A stretch of DNA of 63,917 nt, filler included, from Perkinsus chesapeaki ATCC PRA-425 (GCA_013115145.1; 11 parts of 11 records of this genome joined end to end with filler, not necessarily neighbours in it); one strand, 5' to 3'; positions 2,355 through 16,340 are shown, counted from the first letter of the whole stretch. Numbers and translations are program-made. Notes: a model not told the origin generated them from the sequence alone.

Positions 2355-3459
2355 TTAGGTCGCCTCCGTGGCAATGAATTGCAGATGGATTGCCTTCCCA
2401 CTGTGGCCCCCTTCCTCACCTTCATCCTCCTTTGTATGTACATACCTAAGAACAATAATACCGCAATTGCCTTCTCCCCAATAGCATCACCTTCCAGCAA
2501 CTGTATGATGGTTTGGCAGCTTCCAATAACCTTCACCATGAGGCTTATTATCTCTAAGCACCACAACAACAATCAGATATCCATGCCTGGCAGTGGCCCC
2601 ACTTGAAGTCCCCGGTGTATCGAAGTCCATTAGGTAAGGTCCACGTGCCGGTAGTGAGGCTACCATCCCTCCATTCCCCTGCTATTGAGGACCCATCCTT
2701 ATACACATAAGTGCCATTACCATGCTTTCGACCGTTACACCAATCGCCTGACCGCCGAATATACCCGGAAAAACGAATTAGATGTTTCACAGGACTTCGT
2801 AAAGGGCAAATTTATAAGTTTGCTCGGCATGTCCTATTCATAATGCTAGCCCATCCTATTCTGTTATCCCCGCGTCTTCCCATCATCAACGACACTTCCC
2901 TGCCGAGGTCGAATGCGCCCTACCTACCCGAGTAGGCGTCTCCATTATTGAACCTATACGTTCCTTGGCCATGCTTCTGACCCTCTTTAAACTGTCCGTG
3001 ATATGTACCGCCTCGAAGACCATGGTCTAAGCAAGCCATTCCGCCACTCAAACAATGTATTGCCATCCTGTTCACCCCCACCACCATCACCAGCCTCCTC
3101 CTCCTCTTCACCCACAGCCTTCTTGCCAGTATACACCAGACGGCCCCTACCGTGCTTTTCATTCTCTTGGAACTGTCCGGTATAGATGTCCCCATTCCGG
3201 TACCAATACCTGTTGCCAGGGACCCTAGTGGTGACAGGCCAATGTACCCTACGTTCCGTGGCCATGTCTGATACCCTCATCGAAGTCACCATCATACACC
3301 TCACCATTGCCGTAAACAGCTCTGGCTCGGCCGGTGAAATCTCTCGACGAGTGCGTTACTAACGAAGGACTACAGTGTTCCATATCAGCCCCACTTACCA
3401 GTGCCATCCTCTAGTGTGAGGCTATACGGGGGCACTTCCTCCTCGCCAGCTTCTGCCAT
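2355..3459 (-). CDS. MORN-repeat protein, radial spoke head 1 (RSPH1)-like, multi-exon
   Basis: MAEAGEEEVPP start at 3459. Repeated MORN motifs: YDGDFDEGIRHGHG, YTGQFQENEKHGRG, YHGQFKEGQKHGQG, GDWCNGRKHGNG, DNKPHGEG. Short GT-AG introns. TAA at 2355-2357. Confidence 0.85.
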
Positions 3460-3634
3460 ATTATTCAAGTCCTATCTTCTTGTATAGAAAGCCAGCACAA
3501 CTCAAGCTATACTAGAAATATAATTTCCATGGGCATGATGACGTCAAGTAGCCTTCACTCGTTCGCTCACCATCAGCCGTCTTGACTCCAATGGATCCAC
3601 CACAAACGTCCGGACCTAGCTAGCACGTCCGGCC

Positions 3635-4823
3635 TCAAGGTGGCTTAGGGGTTACTACCAAGCCATTCCTATAGCAGAATGATAGCAAGCACATCCCTAT
3701 GAGATAGATCGGAAGCGCCAGAGCTAGGTATTGGATCCAGGCAAACTTCAAAGTCTCAAACCCCTCCATTTGATATGACCTGTCCACCTGGGATGTTCGA
3801 CCGTTCACTACCGTCTTACACTGGCTGCTCTGGTATAATATAGCTTATGACAGCAGTGAACTCATTGGAGCTACTGGCTGGAGTATCGGACCTGCCTCGA
3901 CCATATCCCATAAAAATTGGCCATCCCTTACCAGATGTCAGGGAAGGACCTCGTCCCTATCAAAGACACTGCTCTGGCAGCCTGTAGGCCACCCAAGGTG
4001 GTCAAGAAATCACCTCCGCTGCTAGAAGCCTGAAGGGGCCGTTGGCAAGCCGGTATACTGACCCATCTGACCTGGTCAAAGATGCTTTCACTGCTAGCTT
4101 GAAGGCCTTCACTAAGTGCAGTACTCTGTAGAAGGTCCAGACGCAGCCACGCTGTGAGGCCGGAGGAGCTTGGTAGACCGGTTGGCCGAAGGAATTCGGT
4201 ACCGACTACAGTGAAAAGCATCCAACAGCACCAAGCGGCCGTGAGAGCACCAGCTGTATAGGCTAAAAGTTTTCGTTTTTTCGCCAGTTCTATTTTGAAT
4301 TCTCCGATGAAGTGCAATGATGCTACGTCTGACAGATAAGCCGAGCTTCAACCTAAGATACGTCCTTTACCTCCGATGCTTGCATTGACTGCCACTTCGA
4401 GTGTTATTTTATCCTTGGTAGCAGTAGGTCGTACACTAAAGGCCGACCTGGCTAATGGCTGAGCATTGGCCAGCATCTACTGAAGCAGTAAAGGACAGTA
4501 AGGACCCACTACAGTACATAGATGTTATTAGTGAAGGTCACTACAGGCCTTTCATGGTAGGTTGAGGACCTCACCCACAAGGCATCTCCGATCAAGGCCA
4601 GGATAAGCGGTACCTGGGGCCATGGTAGGGGCCTTAGAGAGGCCTATATACTACAACTAATACAGTGATGGCCACTACTAACCATAGACAGTATGCAAGG
4701 GAGCATCGACCTAAGATACTATACCCGGAGTCGTCCTCCGGGGGTATGTGCCTTACTAGTAGCGATAAAGTGAACTGCATGGCCCTCGCTGTAGACCTTG
4801 GCGGGGTGAAAAGGGAATAACAT
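3635..4823 (-). CDS. TMEM231: Ciliary transition-zone protein TMEM231, multi-exon
   Basis: VPLILALIGDALWVRSSTYHERPVVTF near the N-terminus and GFETLKFAWIQYLALALPIYLIG..CYRNGLV at the C-terminus match remembered TMEM231 signatures (KFAWIQY). ATG at 4823, TGA at 3635-3637. Confidence 0.85.
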
Positions 4824-4942
4824 GAGAAAGACTTTGTGGACCGGGACTCTGGCTATCTTGCTTTCTTAACAAATCTTGGATTTTCTCAAGTTGTCGAGAG
4901 CATTTTGGTAACTAGCAATTGTTATTCGCATTTGCTGCAGAG

Positions 4943-6283
4943 ATGTCACCGTTGGATGAGCTCATACCAGAGCTCACTAACCTGCCTTTGGATACGTCTC
5001 GAAGGCAGTCATGCTATGTTACACTCGCTAGGATATTAGGAAATATTAGAGATGATCCTACTGAGGACAAATACCACACCATAAAGAAGTCGGCTAAGGT
5101 AAGGCATATCTCAAGGTTAACCGTGCAAGATACAAAATAGGTTAACTTGTGTACTCGGTATTACTCAACCGAAATACTTTCAGGTGCTCCAAAATTCACT
5201 ATGTGATCCCCATACCGGACAGCTATATAGCCCAGTTATAGGCATATTAAGAGAGGCTGGTTTCAAAGAGACCGTCGATGCCTACGTCTGGGACCCTTCT
5301 AGTGACCAACAACGTAAACGGTCCTCGGTATTTCACCCTTCTTACTCAACCAATTCAGATGAAGCTCTTATTGACGCAGCTGAACGTATAGAGGATTTAA
5401 GGAATGCCTTGGTAGCAGCGTCTCACACCAGACCGAGCGGTACTAGGGCGCATAACGTACCAACGCTTTAGTTCGTATTCACTGTAGCCACTGGCACTGG
5501 TACTTTGGGCTCGAAGCCAGTTAGCGGACAAACACGACAGTTTGCCAGACGGACGGATGCCGAAAAGAAGAGGGCTGCCCAAGAGCAACAGATGAAAAAT
5601 CTGAAGCAGGCGTCTCGGGACAAGTACACAACCAGCTTGCTTCGACGGGGAGACGCCTTCATCAGGTTCTACAACTCCACGACTGTTTTACCCACAACCA
5701 GCAGTGGCACTACACGATCGACGTCCAGCTCCGAATCGCCGGAACGCAGCAAAGAAGATGGCCTGCGGCCAACTAGCTCTGGCAAAACAAAACGAACGGC
5801 ATTTGACTTCGAAAGTCGACAGGCTAGAGTCGACCGTGAACAGCGGGCACAGAACCAACTTACCCAATTAAGAGAGGAACAGAAGCGAAGGTCATAGCCC
5901 GGGAAGGACATGGCTAGAGGTGTCAGAATGCGTTATTAGGTATGAAGAAGCATCAGCCGACCCTAGCACCTTCAACACCGCAGCCTACAGAAAGCCCCCG
6001 AGTATAGCCCCGGGTGGCAGGACGGAGGGCAGTAGCTGGACCAGCTGGATACCATTCTTTGGGGGCTCATCATCATCTCGGGATGGTACGCCTTCACTAT
6101 GTAGTGTTGATAATGATACCTTTTTAGATGACCATAACCGTCGTGGTGGACAGCAGCAGCCTGGTCGACCTAATGTTAAGGGAATCGGGGATCTGCCCAA
6201 ACCTCCTAGAGGCGGCTGAGGTACTAAGGCAGTGGGTGTTACTGGGCGAAGGATAGGATTAATCAGGTTCGGCGGCATGCTAG
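4943..6283 (+). CDS. PUB-domain (p97/VCP-binding) protein with C-terminal GG-UGA-G; candidate selenoprotein
   Basis: TLARILGNIRDDPTEDKYHTIK...GILREAGF fits the PUB consensus. Inferred introns 5099-5183, 5440-5487 and 5891-5939 keep the frame. Ends RPNVKGIGDLPKPPRGG-TGA(6217-6219). The CDS ends at 6219 if TGA is a stop, or 6283 if it is Sec with intron 6221-6266. Confidence 0.85.
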
Positions 6284-6307
6284 ATGTCCGTCCATCTAAG
6301 GCCTGTA

Positions 6308-6376
6308 GATAGCCAGCGAATGATCGTATGGGAGCAAACCACCATAGGCCTCTCATATGTTGAAATGCTAGTTATC
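6308..6376 (+). promoter_or_regulatory. Eukaryotic SECIS element (AUGA/AAA/GA type)
   Basis: Helix I: GATAGCCAGC(6308-17)/GCTAGTTATC(6367-76), 9 of 10 pairs. ATGA at 6320-23. Helix II: CGTATGGGAG(6325-34)/CTCTCATATG(6350-59), 10 of 10 pairs including G-U. Apical AAA at 6336-38, 12 nt after AUGA. GA at 6362-63, with one bulged U next to the core. Confidence 0.85.
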
Positions 6377-6438
6377 GTCACTTCATGTGGCAGGACTTAG
6401 GCTCTTTCTGACACCTCTAGCTCTGTAGCACCATTTGT

Positions 6439-8476
6439 CTATTCTGTACCAATTCGCATAGTCCACGCTACCAACAGTGCGTCCAGTGTACGCCTCCTCC
6501 TCTCCTGCCGGTAGTCTGCCAAACACTCATCGAACGTTGTCTGATTCCTACGTGTTCCCATCTTGTGTTTAGTGTCCCAGAATGGTGCTTCTTGTTGCCC
6601 GCTCAGTCTGTATAATCGCCACTGGTGGGGGGAACTAGGAAACTTAGAAATCCTTGAGAGTTCCGCGGCGCACCATTTTACTGTGACGGTAACGGCTTTA
6701 GTGATATCGTGGAAGAGCCGCCGTTCATTAAGCAGAGGGAGCAAGAAAAGCCTATTGGACTTTTTATTACATCTCCGGTGTATAGGGTGGTAACAGTTAC
6801 CCCATATCCTCTTCCATGGCATTCCATGCCAACTCCGAGGAACTACCGTTACGCTTGGAGATCGTAGTAAGCAGCATCGACGTCTCTCCGGTGGTAGAAC
6901 AGATATCTCACTTAGTGGGATCGGCAGCTGGCAAGGCCTGTGAGGTAGGCTCTAGCTCTCTGCTATGTATACCACTACTTGCCAGTTGTCGTTACGGTTA
7001 ACACTAATGGAATATCCTGTACTGTCTATTGTCCCTCCAGCGGTTGACATTGAAGCATCGCCTGTTGTGGATTTTGGTGGACGGGGAAAGTCATGGTGAT
7101 ATTCGCGCTTGTGGCGGTTTACATGTGCTGATGTTCAGTGACTTCACAGTAAAAGCGGAGGCGGCGGGGTTCGAACCTGTGCCTCTCTGGCTCTTGCTTG
7201 TAGTACTGCACGGCCCCTCCTCACTGTACAATTCTCCCAGGTCCTGCGTGTTGGTCCAGATGAGCCATACCTGCTGGCGACGGCCTGCTTCGATATGCGC
7301 CGATACGTCCAGAAAGCCGCCGCACAGATGTCCGACCATCCCCCGGTCCCGTTTGATAGAATAAAGCTAGCGCTAGCTCCCACCACTGGTCGGATGGCCC
7401 CGTTGAAGCCGAGCATTGCGACATGTTTCAGATTTACCTGGCTCAGTTGAAGTGTCCGTGTTCCTTCGAATGTCGAAGGTCTGCGGCACGGCGCCGCTCA
7501 GACGGGACAAGGCCTCGGAAGCCGTGGAGCCACCGCGGCAGCAGCAGCAGCAGCCCACAGTGGTATGTGCTACTGCAAACGTGGGCACGGAGCCATGGCC
7601 TGGAGGAGAGGAAGAGCATGGACACCCGTATACCGGGGGGCATTCACAACGGAGAAGCGATGGGCTTATGATTAATACTGAGCACGGTCGAGACGGCGAT
7701 CGGGGGAGGTCAATGAGCCGCTCTAGAGGGGGGAGAGCACATAGCACTGGCCTTAGTCCAGGACGGCTACGGCAACGACTGTCTCATAGTGTAGAGGAAC
7801 AACTAAGACGATCTAGGGAAAGGCGAAGGACACTTTCAAGGAGCCTATGTGAACTCGCAACGCTGTTTGGATCCCGATCACTTCTCTTCAGCTCGTCGCC
7901 GGCGTTCGCGGTCTCCTCCTATGTCCGCTCTCGGCCAACTCAACCGCCGCGGTCGAGAACGGTTTGGATCTGTTATGCGTAGGGTGCCCGTTGGCGATAG
8001 GGATGTAGTGTCTGCCAGGTCGCAGCACCAGCGAACACGCTCTACGGCTATCCGCACCCTATCAAGGTGATGGGTCACCTAGGCTACCCTCTACCGCTCC
8101 TTCGCTTCACGACGTTCTAGCTGCTGATGACCAGGACGCCAGGAGGAGAAGGGCATCATTAGGAGCTGCTGTGGGTTACTATTGGAGCTTTGCTCGAGAC
8201 ATCTCGCGCCAGGTGGCCTCCCCTTCTAGCCGTAAGCCGAGCACGGCTCCGTCCCATCGTCGCGTCCCTCTGGCCAAGACATTGTCGTTGATACAGGAAC
8301 TGTCTTCTGAAATTACTAAAATTCAGCGAATGACCGCGTCCAAGGCATCGCGTGGTGCCGCCTTTGGTGGGGAGACGGTTACGTGTTATTGCTGTGGGGC
8401 AGAGGTGGTGCTTGTTAATCGTTAGTTTAGCACAATGATATCTGATCAGGTCCCCATAAGCCGAGCCGACATCCAT
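6439..8476 (-). CDS. Hypothetical multi-exon protein with Ser/Arg-rich low-complexity middle; boundaries uncertain
   Basis: Chain of protein-like minus-strand segments (8159-8476, about 7000-7400, 6439-6822) separated by GT-AG-sized gaps. No family recognised. Confidence 0.45.
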
Positions 8477-8705: not shown

Positions 8706-10039
8706 ATGCACCACGGTTCCACGGGTGTAATAGGTGCAACAGCGTCATTGGTAGTGACGTGTGTAGGCGTTGGTGTCCTGGGTCTACCTAAGGTCATGCA
8801 GCAATCCGGATGGATAGGAGGTTTCATCCTACTTTTCGTAGCAGGCCTGGCCTCTATGTGGATGGCCCGACACTTATGTGACGCCTGTGTTGCCCTGAAG
8901 AAAGGCACCGAGTATCCTTCTTTCCAGGATGTTGGTATGCGAACCTTTGGTGTTGCTGGTAAATTGGCTGTTGTTCTCTGCATGGACATCTTCATGATCG
9001 GCCTTTGTGTAATTATGTTAATCCTATTCGCTCAGAATACAATGCGATTATGGCCTGTTCTCACGCAGGGCTGGTGGGTCCTAATTTACGCTTTATTGAT
9101 GATCCCTTTTGTTTGGATAAGATCAATGAAGCTTATCGGATGGCTGTCCTCTGTCGGTGTATTATCTATTATTGCTACTTGTATAGTTATTATTATAGCA
9201 AGTGCCACCAATGCTGTGAAGGAAGGTGACACGCTAGAATATCACCTTTTTAATGACCAGCTCGGCAGCGCTATGGCCACTCTGATGACCTCGTTCGGCC
9301 TAACAACTATGGTCTCAGCCGTCCTTAATAGCGTTGAAGAACCTAAAAAATTCAATAAGGCTTTAATAATGGCATTCGCCATTGTCTTTACTGTGTACAT
9401 TGGTATCATGGCTGCGGGCTACGCTGGGTATGGTGATCAGATTGCCCAGTATGGTGATATTGTAAGTGCAATATCCACATCAACTGGTAAACTGAATTGG
9501 GCTGGCTATGCTATTATAGTATGTATTCTAGTATTATGCGCTACACACTTCCTAGCTCTTTTCACACCAGTCGCTATGGACTGTGAAAGGCTCATTCCCG
9601 AGAAGGCCAGATTTCATCGTCTACTATCCTATCTTATACGAACTGTTCTTGTGGCGATATGTGCCTTACTAGCGACCGTCGTGCCAGGTGTTATGACGCT
9701 GATTTCTATCCTTGGAGCTATCCTTGGCATGCCATGTGTAAGACAATAGCCGGGTTCGTGATTTAGTCGAGTAGTATTCGAGCCCTGTGGAGTCCTTTCG
9801 CAATGAACGTATATTGTAATAAACTATCTTGGCTATTATATACTACACCCGACATACTTGCTATATGGTCATTATATGTCATTTGTTAGGTAATGTTGTT
9901 ACCTCTATTCTTCTACTGGAAGGCTTGCTTTGTTGATACTGCCGGAATTCGGGCTATTTATTCTGGCAGAGTGATTCACTTCATTGGGGAGATCATCGTA
10001 ATTCTCATCTCAATTTACACTCTAGTTTTCGGCCTGTAA
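8706..10039 (+). CDS. Amino acid transporter (Aa_trans/AVT-type), about 11 TM segments
   Basis: LVVTCVGVGVLGLPKVMQQSGWIGG start motif and alternating hydrophobic segments. Intron 9738-9889 continues into VMLLPLFFYWK. TAA at 10037-10039. Confidence 0.9.
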
Positions 10040-10946: not shown

Positions 10947-12965
10947 TTATATAAACAACGGCTGGGACACCGCAGACTCGCGATCGGCGACTCCCTCGGA
11001 GACCGGCAGAGGGGCGACACCAGTCGGTGCGGGAGGCATGTCGCTGGCTTGGTAACCAGTACATTTGTAAAGGTCTGGATTACACTCCGTCTTAGCGATA
11101 CAGTTAAGGCATTTGCTGGTGGCGGGGCCAGAAAGACATTTAAACATGCATTTGTCACGGCCACATTCAACAGATTGGCCGAAGCATGTTGAGCAGGAGG
11201 AAGTTAGTCCACTCTTCTCCAAGCACTTGGTAGTTCCATCAGCACTTCCCCATGCTTGTTTTCCACAGTAGGCTATGTAATTGCTGTAAGCCTGATCATA
11301 GCTAGCCCACAAGTTGTGGTCCACAACACTGCACTCCCCTTGTGCTGAAGGGGTAACTATGCTCGAGGTTGTGGAAGTACTCGTAACGGTAGTTGAGAAT
11401 GTCGAGCTCATCGTGGTAGTGGTTGATGTGGCTATGGTGGTCGTTGAGGTGGCCGTTGTAGTGGCAGGAGTTGAGGTGGTCGTTGTAGTGGCAGGAGTTG
11501 AGGTGGTCGTTGTAGTGGCAGGAGTTGAGGTGCTCGTTGTAGTGACAGGAGTTGAGGTGATCGTTGTAGTGGCAGGAGTTGAGGTGCTTGTTGTAGTGGC
11601 AGGAGTTGAGGTGCTCGTTGTAGTGGCAGGAGTTGAGGTGCTCGTTGTAGTGCTGACAACAGGCAATGTAGTTACAGTCACCGTGGTAGGAGAGATAGTA
11701 GAGGAAGGATAAGCACTGGTAGTTGACGGCAGAGCATCTGTGCCGGTTGGTGCAGGAGGCATGTCAACGGGTTGATATCCAGTACACTTATACAGGGCTG
11801 GATTACACTCCGTCTTCGCGATGCAGCTGAGGCACTTACTAGTCGCAGGACCGGAGATGCAGCTGAACATGCACTTGTCCCGACCACATTGAACAGAGTC
11901 GCCAAAGCAAGTCGAACAAGACGATGTTAAGCCGGACTTTTCCAAGCATTTAGATGTTCCGTCGGCACTTCCCCAGGCTTGTTGGCCACAATAGGCGATA
12001 TAGTTACTATAGGCTTGTCCATAACTAGTCCATAACATATGATCAGCCGAAGTACATTTACCGTAAGGAATTACTGTGGTGGCCACTATCGGGCTAGTTG
12101 AGGAAATACTGCTGCTTTCAGTCGTGGTTGGGGGATAAGTTGACATCGAAGGGCTGGTAGTCGTCATTGTGGTTGTGGTAGTCGTCGTGCTTGTCGTTGG
12201 TGGCATCGTCGTGGTAGGTAAACTCTTGATGGAGGTGCTCGGGTTAGGTGGCAGATCGGCTACCGTGTAACCGGTGCATGTTGAAAGCTCACCGGGGCAC
12301 TTCGAACCATCAATACATTTCAAGCACCAGTTGGAGGTAGCATCCCACATGCATTTGAACCAACACTCATCCTTAGCGCAGCCCTGAAAATCACCAAAGC
12401 AGGTAGTACATGATCCGGATAACTTGTTCATAGGATCATCTAGAAGGCATTGCGATGTCTTTTTAGCGTTGCCCCACTCTTTCTTGGCACAACCCGTGAG
12501 GAAGTTACTGAAGGTCTGACCGTACGAACTCCAGAAATCATAGTCGTTAGCAGAACATTCGCCAAGGGCGGGTAGACGACCGAGAGAGCCAACTGGACGA
12601 GGAGGCAGCTGATCAGACGGGAATCCAGTGCAAGTTTCCAGTTCTCCAGGACACTTCGAGCTCTCAATGCAGCTTAAACACCAATTGGACGTAGGGTCCC
12701 ACATACAGTGAAACCAACATTGATCTTTAGCACATTGCTCGAAGTCACCAAAGCACGCGCCACAGGCACCAGAGAGCGTGCTTTCAGGGTCGTTCACAAG
12801 GCACCGTGCAGTCTTCTCGGCATTGCCCCATTCCTTCTTCGCACAGCCAGTGAGGAAATTGCTGAAGGTAGAACCATACGAACTCCAGAATTTATGATCA
12901 TTTGAGGTACATTGTCCAGCCAGGGCTGCGCCAGCTACAACCGCCAATATAGTCAATCTCATCAT
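10947..12965 (-). CDS. Secreted mucin-like protein with four ~100-aa 8-Cys modules and Thr/Ser-rich linkers (paralogue 1)
   Basis: 672-aa intronless ORF. Signal peptide MMRLTILAVVAGAALA. Module C..D...W...G..FS/YS..C....WG....T..CL....LS..C..CFG....C....C...C......C..C.....C...L..CTG occurs four times. Confidence 0.9.
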   Translation of the reverse strand: MMRLTILAVVAGAALAGQCTSNDHKFWSSYGSTFSNFLTGCAKKEWGNAEKTARCLVNDPESTLSGACGACFGDFEQCAKDQCWFHCMWDPTSNWCLSCIESSKCPGELETCTGFPSDQLPPRPVGSLGRLPALGECSANDYDFWSSYGQTFSNFLTGCAKKEWGNAKKTSQCLLDDPMNKLSGSCTTCFGDFQGCAKDECWFKCMWDATSNWCLKCIDGSKCPGELSTCTGYTVADLPPNPSTSIKSLPTTTMPPTTSTTTTTTTMTTTSPSMSTYPPTTTESSSISSTSPIVATTVIPYGKCTSADHMLWTSYGQAYSNYIAYCGQQAWGSADGTSKCLEKSGLTSSCSTCFGDSVQCGRDKCMFSCISGPATSKCLSCIAKTECNPALYKCTGYQPVDMPPAPTGTDALPSTTSAYPSSTISPTTVTVTTLPVVSTTTSTSTPATTTSTSTPATTTSTSTPATTTITSTPVTTTSTSTPATTTTTSTPATTTTTSTPATTTATSTTTIATSTTTTMSSTFSTTVTSTSTTSSIVTPSAQGECSVVDHNLWASYDQAYSNYIAYCGKQAWGSADGTTKCLEKSGLTSSCSTCFGQSVECGRDKCMFKCLSGPATSKCLNCIAKTECNPDLYKCTGYQASDMPPAPTGVAPLPVSEGVADRESAVSQPLFI
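11455..11643. repeat. 27-bp coding minisatellite, 7 copies (encodes STPATTTST)
   Basis: GTTGTAGTGGCAGGAGTTGAGGTG(G/C)TC units starting at 11455, 11482 ... 11617. Confidence 0.95.
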
Positions 12966-13397: not shown

Positions 13398-15074
13398 TCA
13401 ACAGAAGCATGGTGTATCAGTAGCAAAGCAGACATGGGGGACCTGCCAGCACTTGCAGTAGGAACCCGGATGCTCAGATGAACAAGCGGCATCACAAGTG
13501 AGTCTGGGGGTTGACTCGGCAATGGTGGAAAAAGACGGGGTGGAACACGAACAAGGTTGGTGTGTTCCATGACAAACGGGGTCAACCATCCAATATTTAC
13601 AGTAAGATCCATGGAGTATGCTGCTACACTTCCCGTCGGCTCCAGGACAGCTCACGAAGGAGGGAGTTGTTTTGACAACAAAACTTGAAATCGTAGTGGT
13701 CGAGGTGTGCGTCGTATTTGACTCGACAGTAGTCTTTGTGGAAGGCTCAGCAGTAGTCTCTATGACAGTATTCGCAGCCTGGGTATACGGTGGTTGGGTA
13801 GTGGTTGTAGCCTTGGTAGTCGTCGTTGACTCGACAGTGGTTCCCCTACAAGCAATGGTAGTAGGCTCCATAGTTGTGACTGTGGTTGTGAGTGTAGCAC
13901 TGGTAGTAGGCTTCATAGTCGTGGCCGTGGTTGTAGCACTGGGGGTAGACTTCATAGTCGTGGCCGTGGTTGTAGCACTGGTAGTAGGCTTCATAGTTGT
14001 GGTTGTGGTTGTAGCACTGGTAGTAGGCTTCATAGTTGTGGTTGTGGTTGTAGCACGGGTAGTAGGCTTCATAGTTGTGGTTGTGGTTGTAGCACTGGTA
14101 GTAGGCTGCATAGTCGTGGTCTCGGTCATACTCGTCGAAGAGGAAGCTGTTGCCGTGGGAGACGTGATTGGAGTGCTCGTCGTTTCCGGCAAACGCCCGG
14201 TCCCGGTTGGTGATGGGGGCATATCGACTGCTTGGTATCCAGTACACTTATACAGGGCTGGATTACACTCCGTCTTTGCGATGCAGCTGAGGCACTCACT
14301 AGTCGCAGGACCGGAGATGCAGCTGAACATGCACTTGTCCCGACCACATTGAACAGAATCGCCAAAGCAAGTCGAACAAGACGATGTTAAGCCGGACTTT
14401 TCCAAGCATTTAGATGTTCCGTCGGCACTTCCCCAGGCTTGTTGGCCACAATAGGCGATATAGTTACTATAGGCTTGTCCATAACTAGTCCACAGCATGT
14501 GATCAGCCGAAGTACATTTACCGTAATGAATTACTGTGGTGGTCACTATCGGGCTAGTTGAGGAGATACTGCTGCTTTCAGTCGTGGTTGGGGGATAAGT
14601 TGACATCGAAGGGCTGGTAGTCGTCATTGTGGTTGTGGTTGTGGTAGTCGTCGTGCTTGTCGTCGGTGGCATCGTCGTAGTAGGTAAACTCTTGATGGAG
14701 GTACTCGGGTTAGGTGGCAGATCGGCTACCGCGTAACCGGTGCATGTTGAAAGCTCTCCGGGGCACTTCGAACCATTAATACAATTCAAGCACCGGTTGG
14801 AGGTAGCATCCCAAAAGCATTCGAACCAACACTCACTTTTAGCGCAGCCCTGAAAATCGCCAAAGCAGGTAGCACATGATCCGGATAACTTGTTCATAGG
14901 ATCATCTAGAAGGCATTGCGATGTCTTCTCAGCGTTGCCCCACTCTTTCTTGGCACAGCCCGTGAGGAAGTTACTGAAGGTCCGACCGTACGAGGCCCAG
15001 AATTGATAATCGCTATCAGTGCACTGACCGGCAAGGACTGCTCCAAGTTGAACGGCTGCCATGAGACTCTTCAT
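13398..15074 (-). CDS. Secreted mucin-like protein (paralogue 2): two 8-Cys modules, Thr-rich stalk, two C-terminal 4-Cys GSYCK-W modules
   Basis: Likely start MKSLMAAVQLGAVLAGQC at 15074, aligning with paralogue 1. DNA is near-identical to paralogue 1 over 14225-15020 vs 11760-12560. C-terminal modules C..GSYCKYW..VC..PC and C..GSYCKCW..VC..PC. Confidence 0.9.
   Translation of the reverse strand: MKSLMAAVQLGAVLAGQCTDSDYQFWASYGRTFSNFLTGCAKKEWGNAEKTSQCLLDDPMNKLSGSCATCFGDFQGCAKSECWFECFWDATSNRCLNCINGSKCPGELSTCTGYAVADLPPNPSTSIKSLPTTTMPPTTSTTTTTTTTTMTTTSPSMSTYPPTTTESSSISSTSPIVTTTVIHYGKCTSADHMLWTSYGQAYSNYIAYCGQQAWGSADGTSKCLEKSGLTSSCSTCFGDSVQCGRDKCMFSCISGPATSECLSCIAKTECNPALYKCTGYQAVDMPPSPTGTGRLPETTSTPITSPTATASSSTSMTETTTMQPTTSATTTTTTMKPTTRATTTTTTMKPTTSATTTTTTMKPTTSATTTATTMKSTPSATTTATTMKPTTSATLTTTVTTMEPTTIACRGTTVESTTTTKATTTTQPPYTQAANTVIETTAEPSTKTTVESNTTHTSTTTISSFVVKTTPSFVSCPGADGKCSSILHGSYCKYWMVDPVCHGTHQPCSCSTPSFSTIAESTPRLTCDAACSSEHPGSYCKCWQVPHVCFATDTPCFC
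13894..14120. repeat. 39-bp coding minisatellite, about 6 copies (encodes MKPTTSATTTTTT)
   Basis: GTAGCACTGGTAGTAGGCTTCATAGT(C/T)GTGG(C/T)(C/T)GTGGTT units starting at 13894, 13933 ... 14089. Confidence 0.95.
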
Positions 15075-15089
15075 GTTAGGATAACCAGC

Positions 15090-16340
15090 GTCAATGGAAA
15101 GGCGGCGACCCAGAGTGACTGATCGACTACTACTCAGCCGGTAAACAATCCTGCGGGAATTCCTAAATCCAGCCCTAGGTGCGAACATTATATCTCCTGA
15201 CCAAGCTGCATTTCTACCTGGCCGTGGAACCTCTGATTCTATGTGGGAGTTTATCACTGATGCTATCTTGTCTATGAATGATCGCAAAAACTGGTATGCT
15301 CTACAGACGGACATCGCAGGTGCTTTCGATCGGGTCGATCGACATCTTCTACTGATCCGACTAGAGAAGTTTGGCATCCGTGGCAAACTCCTACACTTAC
15401 TACAAAACTACCTTTCCGACCGCCGGTTTAGAGTCGTCTGCGGTGGAGCTCACTCCACACTATTCTCTGAGATAGCTGGTGTCTGCCAAGGTTCTTGCCT
15501 TGGCCCTATTCTATGGCTAATCTACTTTTCACCCATACAGCCTGCTGCTACTATCGCTGCTGGACCCGGCCTATCCACCTACACCTTCGCTGACGACCAC
15601 ACGCAAGGATCTAGCAGCCGCGACCAACTAGATAGAGGAGAATCAGGAGCCCTGCGATTCACTGCTGGTGCCAGGATAACTATGGAACCATCAAAAAAGG
15701 TTCTGAGTTGCTTTACTAACCGAGCTCGCTCTACTGCTGATAGTTGCCCCATCCTACTAGGACTTCGGATTGACCCCGGTCTTACTATGTCCGTACACTT
15801 CGACCATGTTCTCAAGCGAGTTGCCGTGAGAACGGCCCAACTCCTTCGACTCCGACCCTTCATGGACACTGAGCAACTAGGGCGTTGCTTCAAACAGTAC
15901 TGCTGGCCATATTTGGAGTATGGCATGCCTGGTTTTATTCATGCTAGCGAAGCTCAGTTAAAGCGACTTGATGCCTGTCAAGACCGTTTCCTGGAACTCA
16001 CAGGTTGCTCTCTCCCGTCTCTTGGATGGAGGCGACATGTGGGTATAATGACTTGGCTCTACAAAGTTATAGTTCTACACAGAGGTTCTCCCTCTCTCCA
16101 GGCACGGTTCACTATAACTCAAGGACAGAGTCGTTACAATACGCGTTCCACCTCCCGATCGCACTCATACCAACTCGAGATCAGGAAGAAATCAGATGAC
16201 ATAGTCATATGCCGTCGGTGGTGTAGGGCTCTCGACGCATGGAATGCCCTCCCGTCCTCTGTATTTCCTGAAGAGCGCACAAGGATTGATCACTTCAAAA
16301 TAGCCGTATCATTGCTGAATCGTTTTTTGTAAAAAAAAAA
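15090..16340 (+). mobile_element. 5'-truncated non-LTR retrotransposon (LINE; CR1/L2/Jockey-like C-terminus) ending in A10
   Basis: RT motifs QAAFLPGRGT, DIAGAFDRVD, GVCQGSCLGPILW, FADD. C-terminal YNTRS...WNALP..V...FK. Poly(A) at 16331-16340. Degenerate KGGDPE upstream at about 15100. No TSD found. Confidence 0.9.
15241..16332 (+). CDS. Reverse transcriptase, C-terminal part of LINE ORF2
   Basis: 363-aa ORF carrying the RT motifs above. The frame extends upstream to a stop at 15142-15144. Confidence 0.85.
   Translation: MWEFITDAILSMNDRKNWYALQTDIAGAFDRVDRHLLLIRLEKFGIRGKLLHLLQNYLSDRRFRVVCGGAHSTLFSEIAGVCQGSCLGPILWLIYFSPIQPAATIAAGPGLSTYTFADDHTQGSSSRDQLDRGESGALRFTAGARITMEPSKKVLSCFTNRARSTADSCPILLGLRIDPGLTMSVHFDHVLKRVAVRTAQLLRLRPFMDTEQLGRCFKQYCWPYLEYGMPGFIHASEAQLKRLDACQDRFLELTGCSLPSLGWRRHVGIMTWLYKVIVLHRGSPSLQARFTITQGQSRYNTRSTSRSHSYQLEIRKKSDDIVICRRWCRALDAWNALPSSVFPEERTRIDHFKIAVSLLNRFL

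What the first reader, a model, noticed from the sequence alone, without database searches (positions are those of the whole stretch)
4943..6376. Candidate new selenoprotein: soluble PUB-domain protein with C-terminal GG-U-G and a canonical SECIS
Seen: the gene ends ...RPNVKGIGDLPKPPRGG-TGA-GG. 101 nt after the TGA sits AUGA-N12-AAA...GA, with a 10/10 helix II and a 9/10 helix I. Established: SelK and SelS carry Sec in a Gly-Gly-U-Gly tail after a G/P/R-rich disordered region; SelS works with p97/VCP in ERAD; PUB domains bind the p97 C-terminus. Inference: this is a Sec-containing p97 cofactor with no visible TM helix, combining a PUB domain with a SelK/S-type tail. I do not recognise this architecture among known selenoprotein families. 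A gene finder would annotate the UGA as a stop.
Basis: partly seen in the sequence, partly recalled or inferred. Interest (0 to 1): 0.93.

Follow-up and report, generated by a model that had tools for sequence, protein, structure and literature searches.

The report
Unannotated PUB-domain selenoprotein gene in Perkinsus
A gene of the shellfish parasite Perkinsus chesapeaki, annotated as stopping at a UGA codon, very probably reads that UGA as selenocysteine and makes a PUB-domain protein with a short selenium-and-sulfur tail. The find looks real, but a PUB-domain selenoprotein family has already been listed in algae.

Summary
The window is Perkinsus chesapeaki contig JAAPAO010000654.1. A multi-exon gene starting at 4943 encodes a PUB domain (Pfam 43.4 bits), helical segments and a disordered G/P/R-rich tail ending PPRGG-TGA(6217-6219)-G. 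A SECIS-shaped hairpin lies at 6308-6376.

Orthologous loci in P. marinus and P. olseni keep the TGA and the hairpin. AUGA, AAA and GA are invariant, there are no indels, and 5 stem pairs change on both sides.

After TGA-G comes a GTA donor, then a poorly conserved stretch of 46, 51 or 114 nt, then YAG and a conserved mini-exon. The protein therefore ends GG-U-G-[S/P]-A-A-C, with stop TAG/TAG/TAA. After splicing, UGA-to-AUGA spacing is 54-56 nt in all three species.

Caveats:
- Rfam SECIS models give no hit.
- No RNA data exist.
- Selenium incorporation is untested.
- Two of five residues that PUB domains use to bind the p97 C-terminus are replaced (Tyr to Ile, Asn to Ala), so p97 binding is doubtful.

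The architecture is not unprecedented. Jiang et al. 2020 list a "PUB domain-containing protein" among the 39 of their 42 algal selenoprotein families not flagged as novel. Verdict: a real, misannotated selenoprotein gene, and a new member or variant of a known kind.

The parts
4943..5098 (+). Exon 1 (ATG at 4943). Carries the first half of the PUB domain.
   Evidence: Reproduces annotated protein P0001 exactly when spliced. Pfam PUB hit on this exon alone, E = 1e-6.
5000..5363 (+). PUB domain coding region (residues 20-97), interrupted by introns 5099-5183 and 5314-5358.
   Evidence: Pfam PF09409, 43.4 bits, E = 3.3e-11. Aligned to UBXD1 PUB (6sap), Ile31 and Ala51 stand at the pocket positions of Tyr181 and Asn201.
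5184..5313 (+). Exon 2
   Evidence: Donor GTAAAC, acceptor TTTCAG.
5359..5439 (+). Exon 3
5488..5623 (+). Exon 4
5666..5890 (+). Exon 5. Contains the conserved long helix FDFESRQARVDREQRAQ...EEQKRR.
   Evidence: AF2 helix at residues 211-249, pLDDT 80-88.
5940..6085 (+). Exon 6. Contains the conserved motif GSSWTSW(I/L)PFFGGSSSS.
6128..6220 (+). Exon 7. Disordered G/P/R-rich tail ...GRPNVKGIGDLPKPPRGG, the Sec codon, and the first base of the following Gly codon.
   Evidence: The annotation ends this exon at 6216.
6217..6219 (+). In-frame TGA, proposed selenocysteine codon.
   Evidence: TGA is kept in P. marinus (L001 7376) and P. olseni (L003 4461), with synonymous changes in the flanking codons.
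6221..6266 (+). Proposed terminal intron, 46 nt, phase 1 (GTACTAAG...TTAATCAG).
   Evidence: GTA.TA donor and YAG acceptor are conserved. Length is 46, 51 and 114 nt in the three species. Pairwise identity is only 22-35% with many gaps, against 72-88% in the next exon. No RNA evidence.
6267..6283 (+). Proposed exon 8: (G)GT TCG GCG GCA TGC TAG, giving G-S-A-A-C-stop. Stop codon at 6281-6283.
   Evidence: The three species give GSAAC*, GPAAC* and GPAAC*. Three of four variable sites are synonymous or preserve the stop (TAG/TAG/TAA).
6308..6376 (+). Type II SECIS element: helix I, AUGA 6320-6323, helix II 6325-6334 with 6350-6359, AAA 6336-6338, mini-stem 6339-6340 with 6347-6348, GA 6362-6363.
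   Evidence: MFE fold. Alignment of three species has no gaps. 90.9% of cells pair, against 29-44% with slid partners, and 5 pairs change on both sides. Only hit of an ad hoc SECIS scan in the piece. Rfam gives no hit.

Best explanation
This is a selenoprotein gene of Perkinsus chesapeaki (locus FOL47_009413) that the annotation truncates at its Sec codon.

Gene and recoding:
- The gene has 8 exons.
- UGA at 6217-6219 is recoded to selenocysteine by a type II SECIS in the 3'UTR (6308-6376).
- A 46-nt phase-1 intron (6221-6266) splits the Gly codon directly after the Sec codon.
- A 17-nt last exon ends the protein as ...PKPPRGG-U-G-S-A-A-C (327 residues).
- In the spliced mRNA the SECIS core lies only 54 nt after the UGA and 36 nt after the true stop.

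Product: a soluble protein with an N-terminal PUB domain, two helical segments, and a disordered G/P/R-rich tail. The last six residues hold a Sec and a C-terminal Cys.

Inferred function: a scaffold in the ubiquitin/Cdc48(p97) network whose flexible tail acts as a redox centre through a Sec-Cys selenenylsulfide. This is the same logic as the SELENOS tail.

What is shown: conservation of the UGA, the splice sites, the mini-exon and the SECIS. What is inferred: splicing, Sec insertion, the redox role and the binding partner. Binding to the p97 C-terminus in particular is doubtful, because two of the five pocket determinants are replaced.
For: - Gene model: it reproduces annotated P0001 exactly up to the TGA.
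- Orthologous loci L001 (P. marinus) and L003 (P. olseni) keep PKPPRGG-TGA-G|GTA, with synonymous changes around the TGA.
- Beyond the TGA, all three have a GTA.TA donor, a divergent stretch of 46/51/114 nt (22-35% identity, many gaps), a YAG acceptor, and then a block that is 72-88% identical and reads G[S/P]AAC-stop.
- Three of the four variable sites in that block are silent or keep the stop. The true stop varies (TAG/TAG/TAA) while the TGA never does.
- Without splicing, the P. olseni frame stops after 5 codons and the P. chesapeaki frame is shifted. Only read-through plus splicing explains the conserved block as coding.
- The other introns of the gene are 42-49 nt (one is 85 nt) and have similar donors.
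- SECIS: no indels over 81 columns; AUGA, AAA and GA invariant; 90.9% of cells paired against 29-44% with slid partners; 5 pairs with changes on both sides, matched by 7 of 500 shuffles. RNAalifold recovers the same structure.
- Spliced UGA-to-AUGA spacing is 54/56/55 nt despite the different intron lengths.
- The SECIS pattern is unique in the piece, with 0.03 expected by chance.
- Sec trait in the genus: the supplement of Mariotti et al. 2015 lists 'SPS.1.selenocysteine.Perkinsus_marinus'.
- PUB domain: Pfam 43.4 bits.
Against: - Rfam release 15 gives no SECIS hit at E <= 10 for the element in any of the three species, even on stretches of 121-141 nt.
- The fold energy is not exceptional (z = -1.2).
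- Only three related species were available, so covariation counts are small, and the mini-exon has only four variable sites.
- No RNA run holds the gene. The terminal splice, the 3' end of the mRNA and expression are therefore unverified.
- The spliced UGA-SECIS spacing of 54-56 nt sits at the bottom of the 51-111 nt minimum reported for a mammalian SECIS (PMC8659212).
- The Sec machinery of P. chesapeaki itself was not examined.
[quoted passage not shown] The tail matches no SelK or SelS profile.
Confidence: 0.8

Rival explanations
1. The UGA is an ordinary stop, as annotated. The protein ends ...PPRGG. The hairpin, the intron-like stretch and the 17-nt block are conserved 3'UTR features with another role, such as mRNA stability, localisation or 3'-end formation.
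For: Rfam SECIS models do not recognise the hairpin in any species. There are no expression data. Conservation of a stop codon across three congeners is not surprising in itself. The mini-exon has only 4 variable sites.
Against: - The hairpin has every SECIS hallmark (AUGA, N12, AAA, GA, helix lengths, mini-stem) with compensatory changes and no indels.
- A 3'UTR intron starting 1 nt after a stop, with conserved splice sites and a downstream block that varies only at synonymous positions and ends in a movable stop (TAG/TAA), is hard to explain without translation.
- The genus has a Sec-type SPS2.
Confidence: 0.1
2. The UGA is read through, but without selenocysteine. The hairpin would stimulate near-cognate decoding (Trp, Cys or Arg), as in the stem-loop-dependent UGA read-through without Sec described in Drosophila (a reference cited in PMC6394959).
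For: The comparative evidence shows translation past the UGA. It does not show which residue is inserted.
Against: The element has the specific SECIS core (AUGA...AA...GA) that SBP2 reads. A GG-U-G context next to a Cys is typical of Sec tails. Perkinsus marinus encodes a Sec-containing SPS2.
Confidence: 0.04
3. Sec is inserted but there is no terminal intron. The unspliced frame is translated, which in P. chesapeaki adds 30 residues (GTKAVG...KACR) up to TAG at 6310, running into helix I of the SECIS.
For: No RNA data prove the splice. In P. marinus the 51-nt stretch is in frame and open, so both forms end in PAAC.
Against: The unspliced extensions are unrelated in sequence and length between species. 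The P. olseni extension stops after 5 codons. Indels of 1 and 4 nt shift the frame. The stretch is 22-35% identical, like an intron.
Confidence: 0.05

Closest known systems
Algal 'PUB domain-containing protein' selenoprotein family (Jiang et al. 2020, BMC Genomics 21:699, PMC7539508)
   Same: A PUB domain combined with selenocysteine. Reported as one of the least widely distributed Sec families in algae, and not counted among that paper's three novel families.
   Different: The paper gives no sequences, Sec position or architecture in the text held here, and its database could not be reached. Whether the Perkinsus gene is homologous outside the PUB domain, or has Sec at the same place, is unknown. 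Perkinsus was not among the 137 algae surveyed. No relative outside Perkinsus was found by sequence search.
SELENOS (VIMP)
   Same: A p97-network protein with a helical segment, a disordered G/P/R-rich tail, Sec next to Gly-Gly near the C-terminus, and a partner Cys in the tail that can form a selenenylsulfide. SELENOS is listed as a p97 adapter in PMC10641518. The SELENOS tail features are from general knowledge.
   Different: No transmembrane helix (KD19 maximum 0.48). No conserved VIM: the Ala-Ala of the candidate stretch is not kept in the orthologues. No Pfam Selenoprotein_S match. The candidate contact module is a PUB domain, which binds the p97 C-terminus, rather than a VIM, which binds the N-domain. 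Here the Cys lies 5 residues after Sec. In human SELENOS it lies upstream of Sec (from general knowledge).
SELENOK
   Same: A P/G/R-rich disordered tail ending ...GG-U-G.
   Different: No N-terminal TM helix. No Pfam SelK_SelG match. The protein is much larger and has a folded PUB domain. The tail continues to a C-terminal Cys.
PUB domains of UBXD1 and PNGase (bind the p97 C-terminal motif)
   Same: Pfam PUB match above the cut-off. Asn184, Tyr194 and Lys198 of the YxxN(x)9Y and K/RxxN motifs are kept as Asn34, Tyr44 and Lys48.
   Different: Tyr181 is Ile31 and Asn201 is Ala51 in all Perkinsus orthologues. In UBXD1, Y181A and N201A weaken binding about 8-fold and 5-fold (PMC6995525).
SPATA2 PUB domain
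   Same: It lacks the first pocket Tyr (Val in SPATA2, Ile here). SPATA2-PUB does not bind PIM peptides and binds the CYLD USP domain instead (PMC6995525).
   Different: There is no sequence evidence of a specific relationship. The Perkinsus domain keeps the second Tyr and the Asn.

Membership tests
Eukaryotic selenoprotein gene | In-frame UGA conserved as UGA (or Cys codon) in orthologues | tested here: met
   TGA is kept in P. chesapeaki, P. marinus and P. olseni, with synonymous changes in neighbouring codons.
Eukaryotic selenoprotein gene | Coding-type conservation downstream of the UGA | tested here: met
   After a conserved GT..AG intron, the sequence reads G[S/P]AAC-stop in all three species. 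Three of four variable sites are silent or keep the stop. The sample is small: 5 codons, 3 species.
Eukaryotic selenoprotein gene | SECIS-form hairpin in the 3'UTR (AUGA, unpaired AA, GA, helices I and II), maintained by compensatory change | tested here: met
   invariant core, no indels, 90.9% of cells paired, 5 pairs changed on both sides. Its location in the 3'UTR is inferred from the gene model, not from RNA.
Eukaryotic selenoprotein gene | Match to a curated SECIS covariance model | tested here: not met
   Rfam release 15 gives no SECIS family at E <= 10 for the element of any of the three species. SECISearch3 was not available. No Perkinsus positive control could be run.
Eukaryotic selenoprotein gene | Sec machinery in the genome (tRNA-Sec, SBP2, eEFSec, PSTK, SecS, SPS2) | not testable with these tools
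   The whole genome was not searchable. Literature only: a Sec-containing SPS2 is predicted in P. marinus (Mariotti et al. 2015, supplementary file 28). There is no tRNA in the window.
Eukaryotic selenoprotein gene | Selenium in the protein | not testable with these tools
   Needs 75Se labelling or mass spectrometry.
PUB domain (PF09409) | Profile match above Pfam's gathering score | tested here: met
   43.4 bits against a 34.3 cut-off, residues 20-97, profile positions 3-78 of 82.
PUB domains that bind the p97 C-terminal PIM | YxxN(x)9Y pocket plus K/RxxN carboxylate clamp | tested here: not met
   The gapless phmmer alignment to UBXD1 PUB 6sap gives I31-xx-N34-(x)9-Y44 and K48-xx-A51. The first Tyr and the clamp Asn are replaced in all four Perkinsus sequences. 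Determinants are taken from PMC6995525.
SELENOK / SELENOS | Sequence-profile membership (Pfam SelK_SelG, Selenoprotein_S) | tested here: not met
   No hit at E <= 1 or E <= 10 for the last exon, the tail, or residues 120-321.
SELENOK / SELENOS | Single N-terminal transmembrane helix | tested here: not met
   Maximum 19-residue Kyte-Doolittle mean is 0.48.
SELENOK / SELENOS | Disordered G/P/R-rich C-terminal region with Sec in a GG-U-G context | tested here: met
   The tail reads ...GRPNVKGIGDLPKPPRGG-U-G. pLDDT is about 30 over residues 253-321.
Algal PUB selenoprotein family (Jiang et al. 2020) | Homology to its members and the same Sec position | not testable with these tools
   The family is only named in the paper's text. 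No sequences are in the supplement held. The probable first description (Gobler et al. 2013) is not held.

The most novel reading that the evidence does not exclude
The Perkinsus protein is not homologous to the algal PUB selenoproteins outside the PUB domain. On this reading it is an independent, Perkinsea-specific invention of SelS-like logic: a soluble adaptor of the ubiquitin/Cdc48 network carrying a terminal Sec...Cys redox pair. Its degenerate PUB pocket would point to a partner other than the p97 tail. Its mRNA would combine two unusual features: an intron splitting the codon right after Sec, and a conserved UGA-to-SECIS spacing of about 55 nt, at the reported lower limit.
Probability: 0.3. 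Interest if true: 0.7.

Novelty: new member of a known kind. Interest (0 to 1): 0.55.

Why it matters
- Annotation. It corrects three Perkinsus genomes. P. chesapeaki truncates the gene at the Sec codon. P. marinus and P. olseni fuse it to the next gene.
- Selenoproteome. It adds a selenoprotein to a parasite of commercial shellfish whose selenoproteome is not described in the papers searched here.
- Biology. It gives a second, soluble link between selenocysteine and the Cdc48/p97-ubiquitin machinery besides the membrane proteins SELENOS and SELENOK. Its Sec-x4-Cys terminus invites a direct test for selenenylsulfide redox chemistry.
- Gene finding. It is a useful test case. The Sec codon is followed 1 nt later by an intron, the true C-terminus is a 17-nt exon, and the SECIS sits about 55 nt from the UGA in the spliced mRNA. 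Rfam SECIS models miss the element.

Tried and rejected
- Rfam with permissive thresholds, on the whole piece and on 121-141-nt stretches of all three species: no SECIS hit, only chance CRISPR-repeat and Ocean-VII matches.
- RNA evidence: no RNA run holds the gene. The two small RNA runs of the species laid nothing on it.
- Protein searches. The last exon alone found nothing. Exon 5-type sequence against 1.84 billion representatives found only the gene itself and P. marinus. The full protein and a 4-sequence profile found only Perkinsus.
- Metagenome scans, by protein pattern and by SECIS core pattern: nothing.
- AF2 with a 4-sequence alignment gave mean pLDDT 53, and the Foldseek hits were helical-bundle noise. 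The structure was not used.
- ESM Atlas gave only weak leads (scores 0.72-0.90) to small PUB proteins of haptophytes, chlorophytes and molluscs and to PUB+VHL proteins of diatoms. It returns no ids, so these could not be followed.
- A VIM-like stretch (KKRAAQEQQ) was rejected because the Ala-Ala is not conserved in the orthologues.
- The unspliced 30-codon extension was rejected because it is not conserved.
- Gobler et al. 2011 and 2013 are not held.

Full report
**What the window is.** The annotated protein P0001 (321 aa, 'hypothetical protein FOL47_009413 [Perkinsus chesapeaki]', UniRef 'PUB domain-containing protein') is encoded on NCBI contig JAAPAO010000654.1. That contig is 18,778 bp, exactly the length of the piece. 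Contigs of two DNA runs of the same organism reproduce 4900-6700 with no differences across the TGA and the hairpin.

**Check of the observation.**
- ATG lies at 4943. The frame ends ...RPNVKGIGDLPKPPRGG, then TGA at 6217-6219, then GGT.
- AUGA lies at 6320-6323, then 12 nt, then AAA at 6336-6338. GA lies at 6362-6363.
- The minimum-free-energy fold of 6290-6390 is the SECIS form. It has helix I (6308-6313/6371-6376 and 6315-6318/6366-6369), a symmetric internal loop AAUGAU/UUGAAA, a 10-bp helix II (6325-6334/6350-6359), and an apical region with CAAA and a CC/GG mini-stem. This is the type II layout.
- The energy alone is not special (z = -1.2).
- A simple SECIS-pattern scan of my own found this as the only hit on both strands of the piece, against 0.03 expected per first-order-Markov randomisation. 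The thresholds were chosen after seeing the element.

**Gene model.** Splicing 4943-5098, 5184-5313, 5359-5439, 5488-5623, 5666-5890, 5940-6085 and 6128-6216 reproduces P0001 exactly.
- Introns are 85, 45, 48, 42, 49 and 42 nt, with GTA-type donors and YAG acceptors.
- Pfam places a PUB domain at residues 20-97 (43.4 bits, cut-off 34.3).
- No 19-residue window exceeds a Kyte-Doolittle mean of 0.48, so there is no TM helix.
- A low-confidence AF2 model shows helices in the PUB region, helices at 145-171 and 211-249, and no structure from 253 to the end.

**Orthologues.** Only Perkinsus relatives were found.
- P. marinus Pmar_PMAR013674 (P0002) and P. olseni FOL46_007030 (P0003) both have gene models that leave the true tail and run into the next gene downstream.
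- A partial P. olseni model (P0004) is cut by a contig end.
- Their loci (L001, L003) align with the window across the tail and beyond.
- All three read PKPPRGG-TGA-G, with synonymous differences in the Pro, Arg and Gly codons and an unchanged TGA.

**The missed intron and the real C-terminus.** Immediately after TGA-G all three species have GTA(C/A/G)TA.
- What follows is poorly conserved: 22-35% pairwise identity, many gaps, and lengths of 46, 51 and 114 nt.
- It ends in YAG. Then comes a block that is 72-88% identical: GT TCG GCG GCA TGC TAG, GT CCA GCG GCT TGC TAG and GT CCG GCG GCA TGC TAA.
- Spliced, the proteins end U-G-S-A-A-C, U-G-P-A-A-C and U-G-P-A-A-C.
- Of the four variable sites, two are third-position synonymous, one switches TAG to TAA, and one changes Ser to Pro.
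- Unspliced, the P. olseni frame stops after five codons and the P. chesapeaki frame is shifted. Only UGA read-through plus splicing makes the block coding in every species.
- In window coordinates the intron is 6221-6266, the last exon is 6267-6283 and the stop is 6281-6283.
- The splice is inferred. No RNA run holds the gene.

**SECIS conservation.** An 81-column alignment of the three elements has no gap.
- AUGA, the AAA and the GA are invariant.
- On the structure I specified, 90.9% of cells form standard pairs, against 29-44% when the 3' partners are slid by 1-3 columns.
- Five pairs carry changes on both sides, for example A-U/G-C, U-A/C-G, A-U/U-A and G-C/C-G. Seven of 500 shuffles reach that number.
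- RNAalifold predicts the same structure on its own.
- In the spliced mRNA the distance from UGA to AUGA is 54, 56 and 55 nt, although intron lengths differ by 68 nt. This is at the bottom of the 51-111 nt minimal spacing quoted for a mammalian SECIS (PMC8659212). It is unusual but conserved.

**Against.** Rfam release 15 reports no SECIS family at E <= 10 for any of the three elements, even when only 121-141 nt are searched.
- I weigh it as a sensitivity failure rather than a rejection, because the covariation evidence is independent of any model. I could not run a Perkinsus positive control or SECISearch3.
- The Sec machinery could not be searched in the genome. The only support is the supplement of Mariotti et al. 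2015, which lists a Sec-containing SPS2 prediction in P. marinus (AAXJ01000359.1).

**What the protein may do.** PUB domains bind the C-terminal Leu-Tyr-Gly of p97 (PMC10641518).
- Blueggel et al. (PMC6995525) define the pocket as YxxN(x)9Y plus K/RxxN. They show that Y181A and N201A weaken UBXD1 binding about 8- and 5-fold. They also note that SPATA2-PUB, which has Val for the first Tyr, does not bind the motif.
- The gapless phmmer alignment of P0001 to UBXD1-PUB gives Ile31, Asn34, Tyr44, Lys48 and Ala51 at these five places.
- Ile31 and Ala51 are invariant in the Perkinsus sequences.
- The 'p97 cofactor' inference therefore rests on domain family only and is weakened. A different partner is possible.
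- The tail resembles SELENOK and SELENOS in composition and in GG-U-G, but matches neither Pfam profile. It lacks their TM helix and ends in a Cys five residues after Sec.
- A Sec-Cys selenenylsulfide on a flexible tail, as in SELENOS, is the most economical functional guess. It is inference only.

**Novelty.** Jiang et al. 2020 (PMC7539508) list 'PUB: PUB domain-containing protein' among 42 algal selenoprotein families. They describe it as one of the least widely distributed, and it is not one of their three novel families.
- The paper's text and the supplement held here give no sequence or Sec position. The likely first description is not held.
- A PUB-domain selenoprotein is therefore not a new kind of thing. 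Whether the Perkinsus gene belongs to that family or is an independent variant cannot be decided here.
- Weak ESM Atlas leads point to small PUB proteins in haptophytes and chlorophytes. These fit a shared family but prove nothing.

**Verdict.** This is a real and conserved, but misannotated, selenoprotein gene. Confidence is about 0.8 for Sec decoding with the spliced tail. The C-terminus, the p97 claim and the novelty claim need correction.

Noticed in passing
L001:6001-8482 (P. marinus) and L003:3001-5822 (P. olseni): The public gene models P0002 and P0003 join the N-terminal part of the PUB gene to exons of the next gene downstream, skipping the Sec tail. In the window that neighbour starts near ATG 6816 and reads ...ELPLRLEIVVSSIDVSPV.... 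Both models look like fusions of two genes.
   Followed up: partly
window 5107-5148, 5876-5936, 6364-6424: Short stretches inside intron 1, inside intron 5 and just 3' of the SECIS have 3- to 13-fold higher word depth in DNA contigs. Many other contigs end or begin there. They appear to be short sequences repeated across the genome.
   Followed up: no
window 6389-6399: A motif (G/A)CAGGACTT, about 13 nt after the SECIS, is nearly identical in all three Perkinsus species, while its surroundings diverge. It may be a 3'-end or regulatory signal.
   Followed up: no
window 10947-12965 (-) and 13398-15386 (-): Two neighbouring long ORFs encode paralogous proteins. They have repeated Cys-rich modules (CTS.DH.FW.SYG...C.GY) separated by long Thr/Ser/Pro-rich mucin-like runs. 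There is no Pfam match.
   Followed up: partly
window 15241-16332 (+): An ORF with a reverse-transcriptase domain (RVT_1, E = 1.7e-13). Probably a retroelement remnant.
   Followed up: partly
window 413+1942 to 2881+1942 (about 2355-4823, -) and 8706-9749 (+): Gene order is conserved in all three species: a MORN/TMEM231-type gene upstream on the opposite strand, then the PUB gene, an unnamed gene, and an Aa_trans amino-acid transporter.
   Followed up: no
window 6020-6085 (protein motif GSSWTSW(I/L)PFFGGSSSS): A short aromatic and hydrophobic motif in the otherwise disordered region is strictly conserved among the Perkinsus orthologues. It is too short for a TM helix. It may be a binding or membrane-associating motif.
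   Followed up: no
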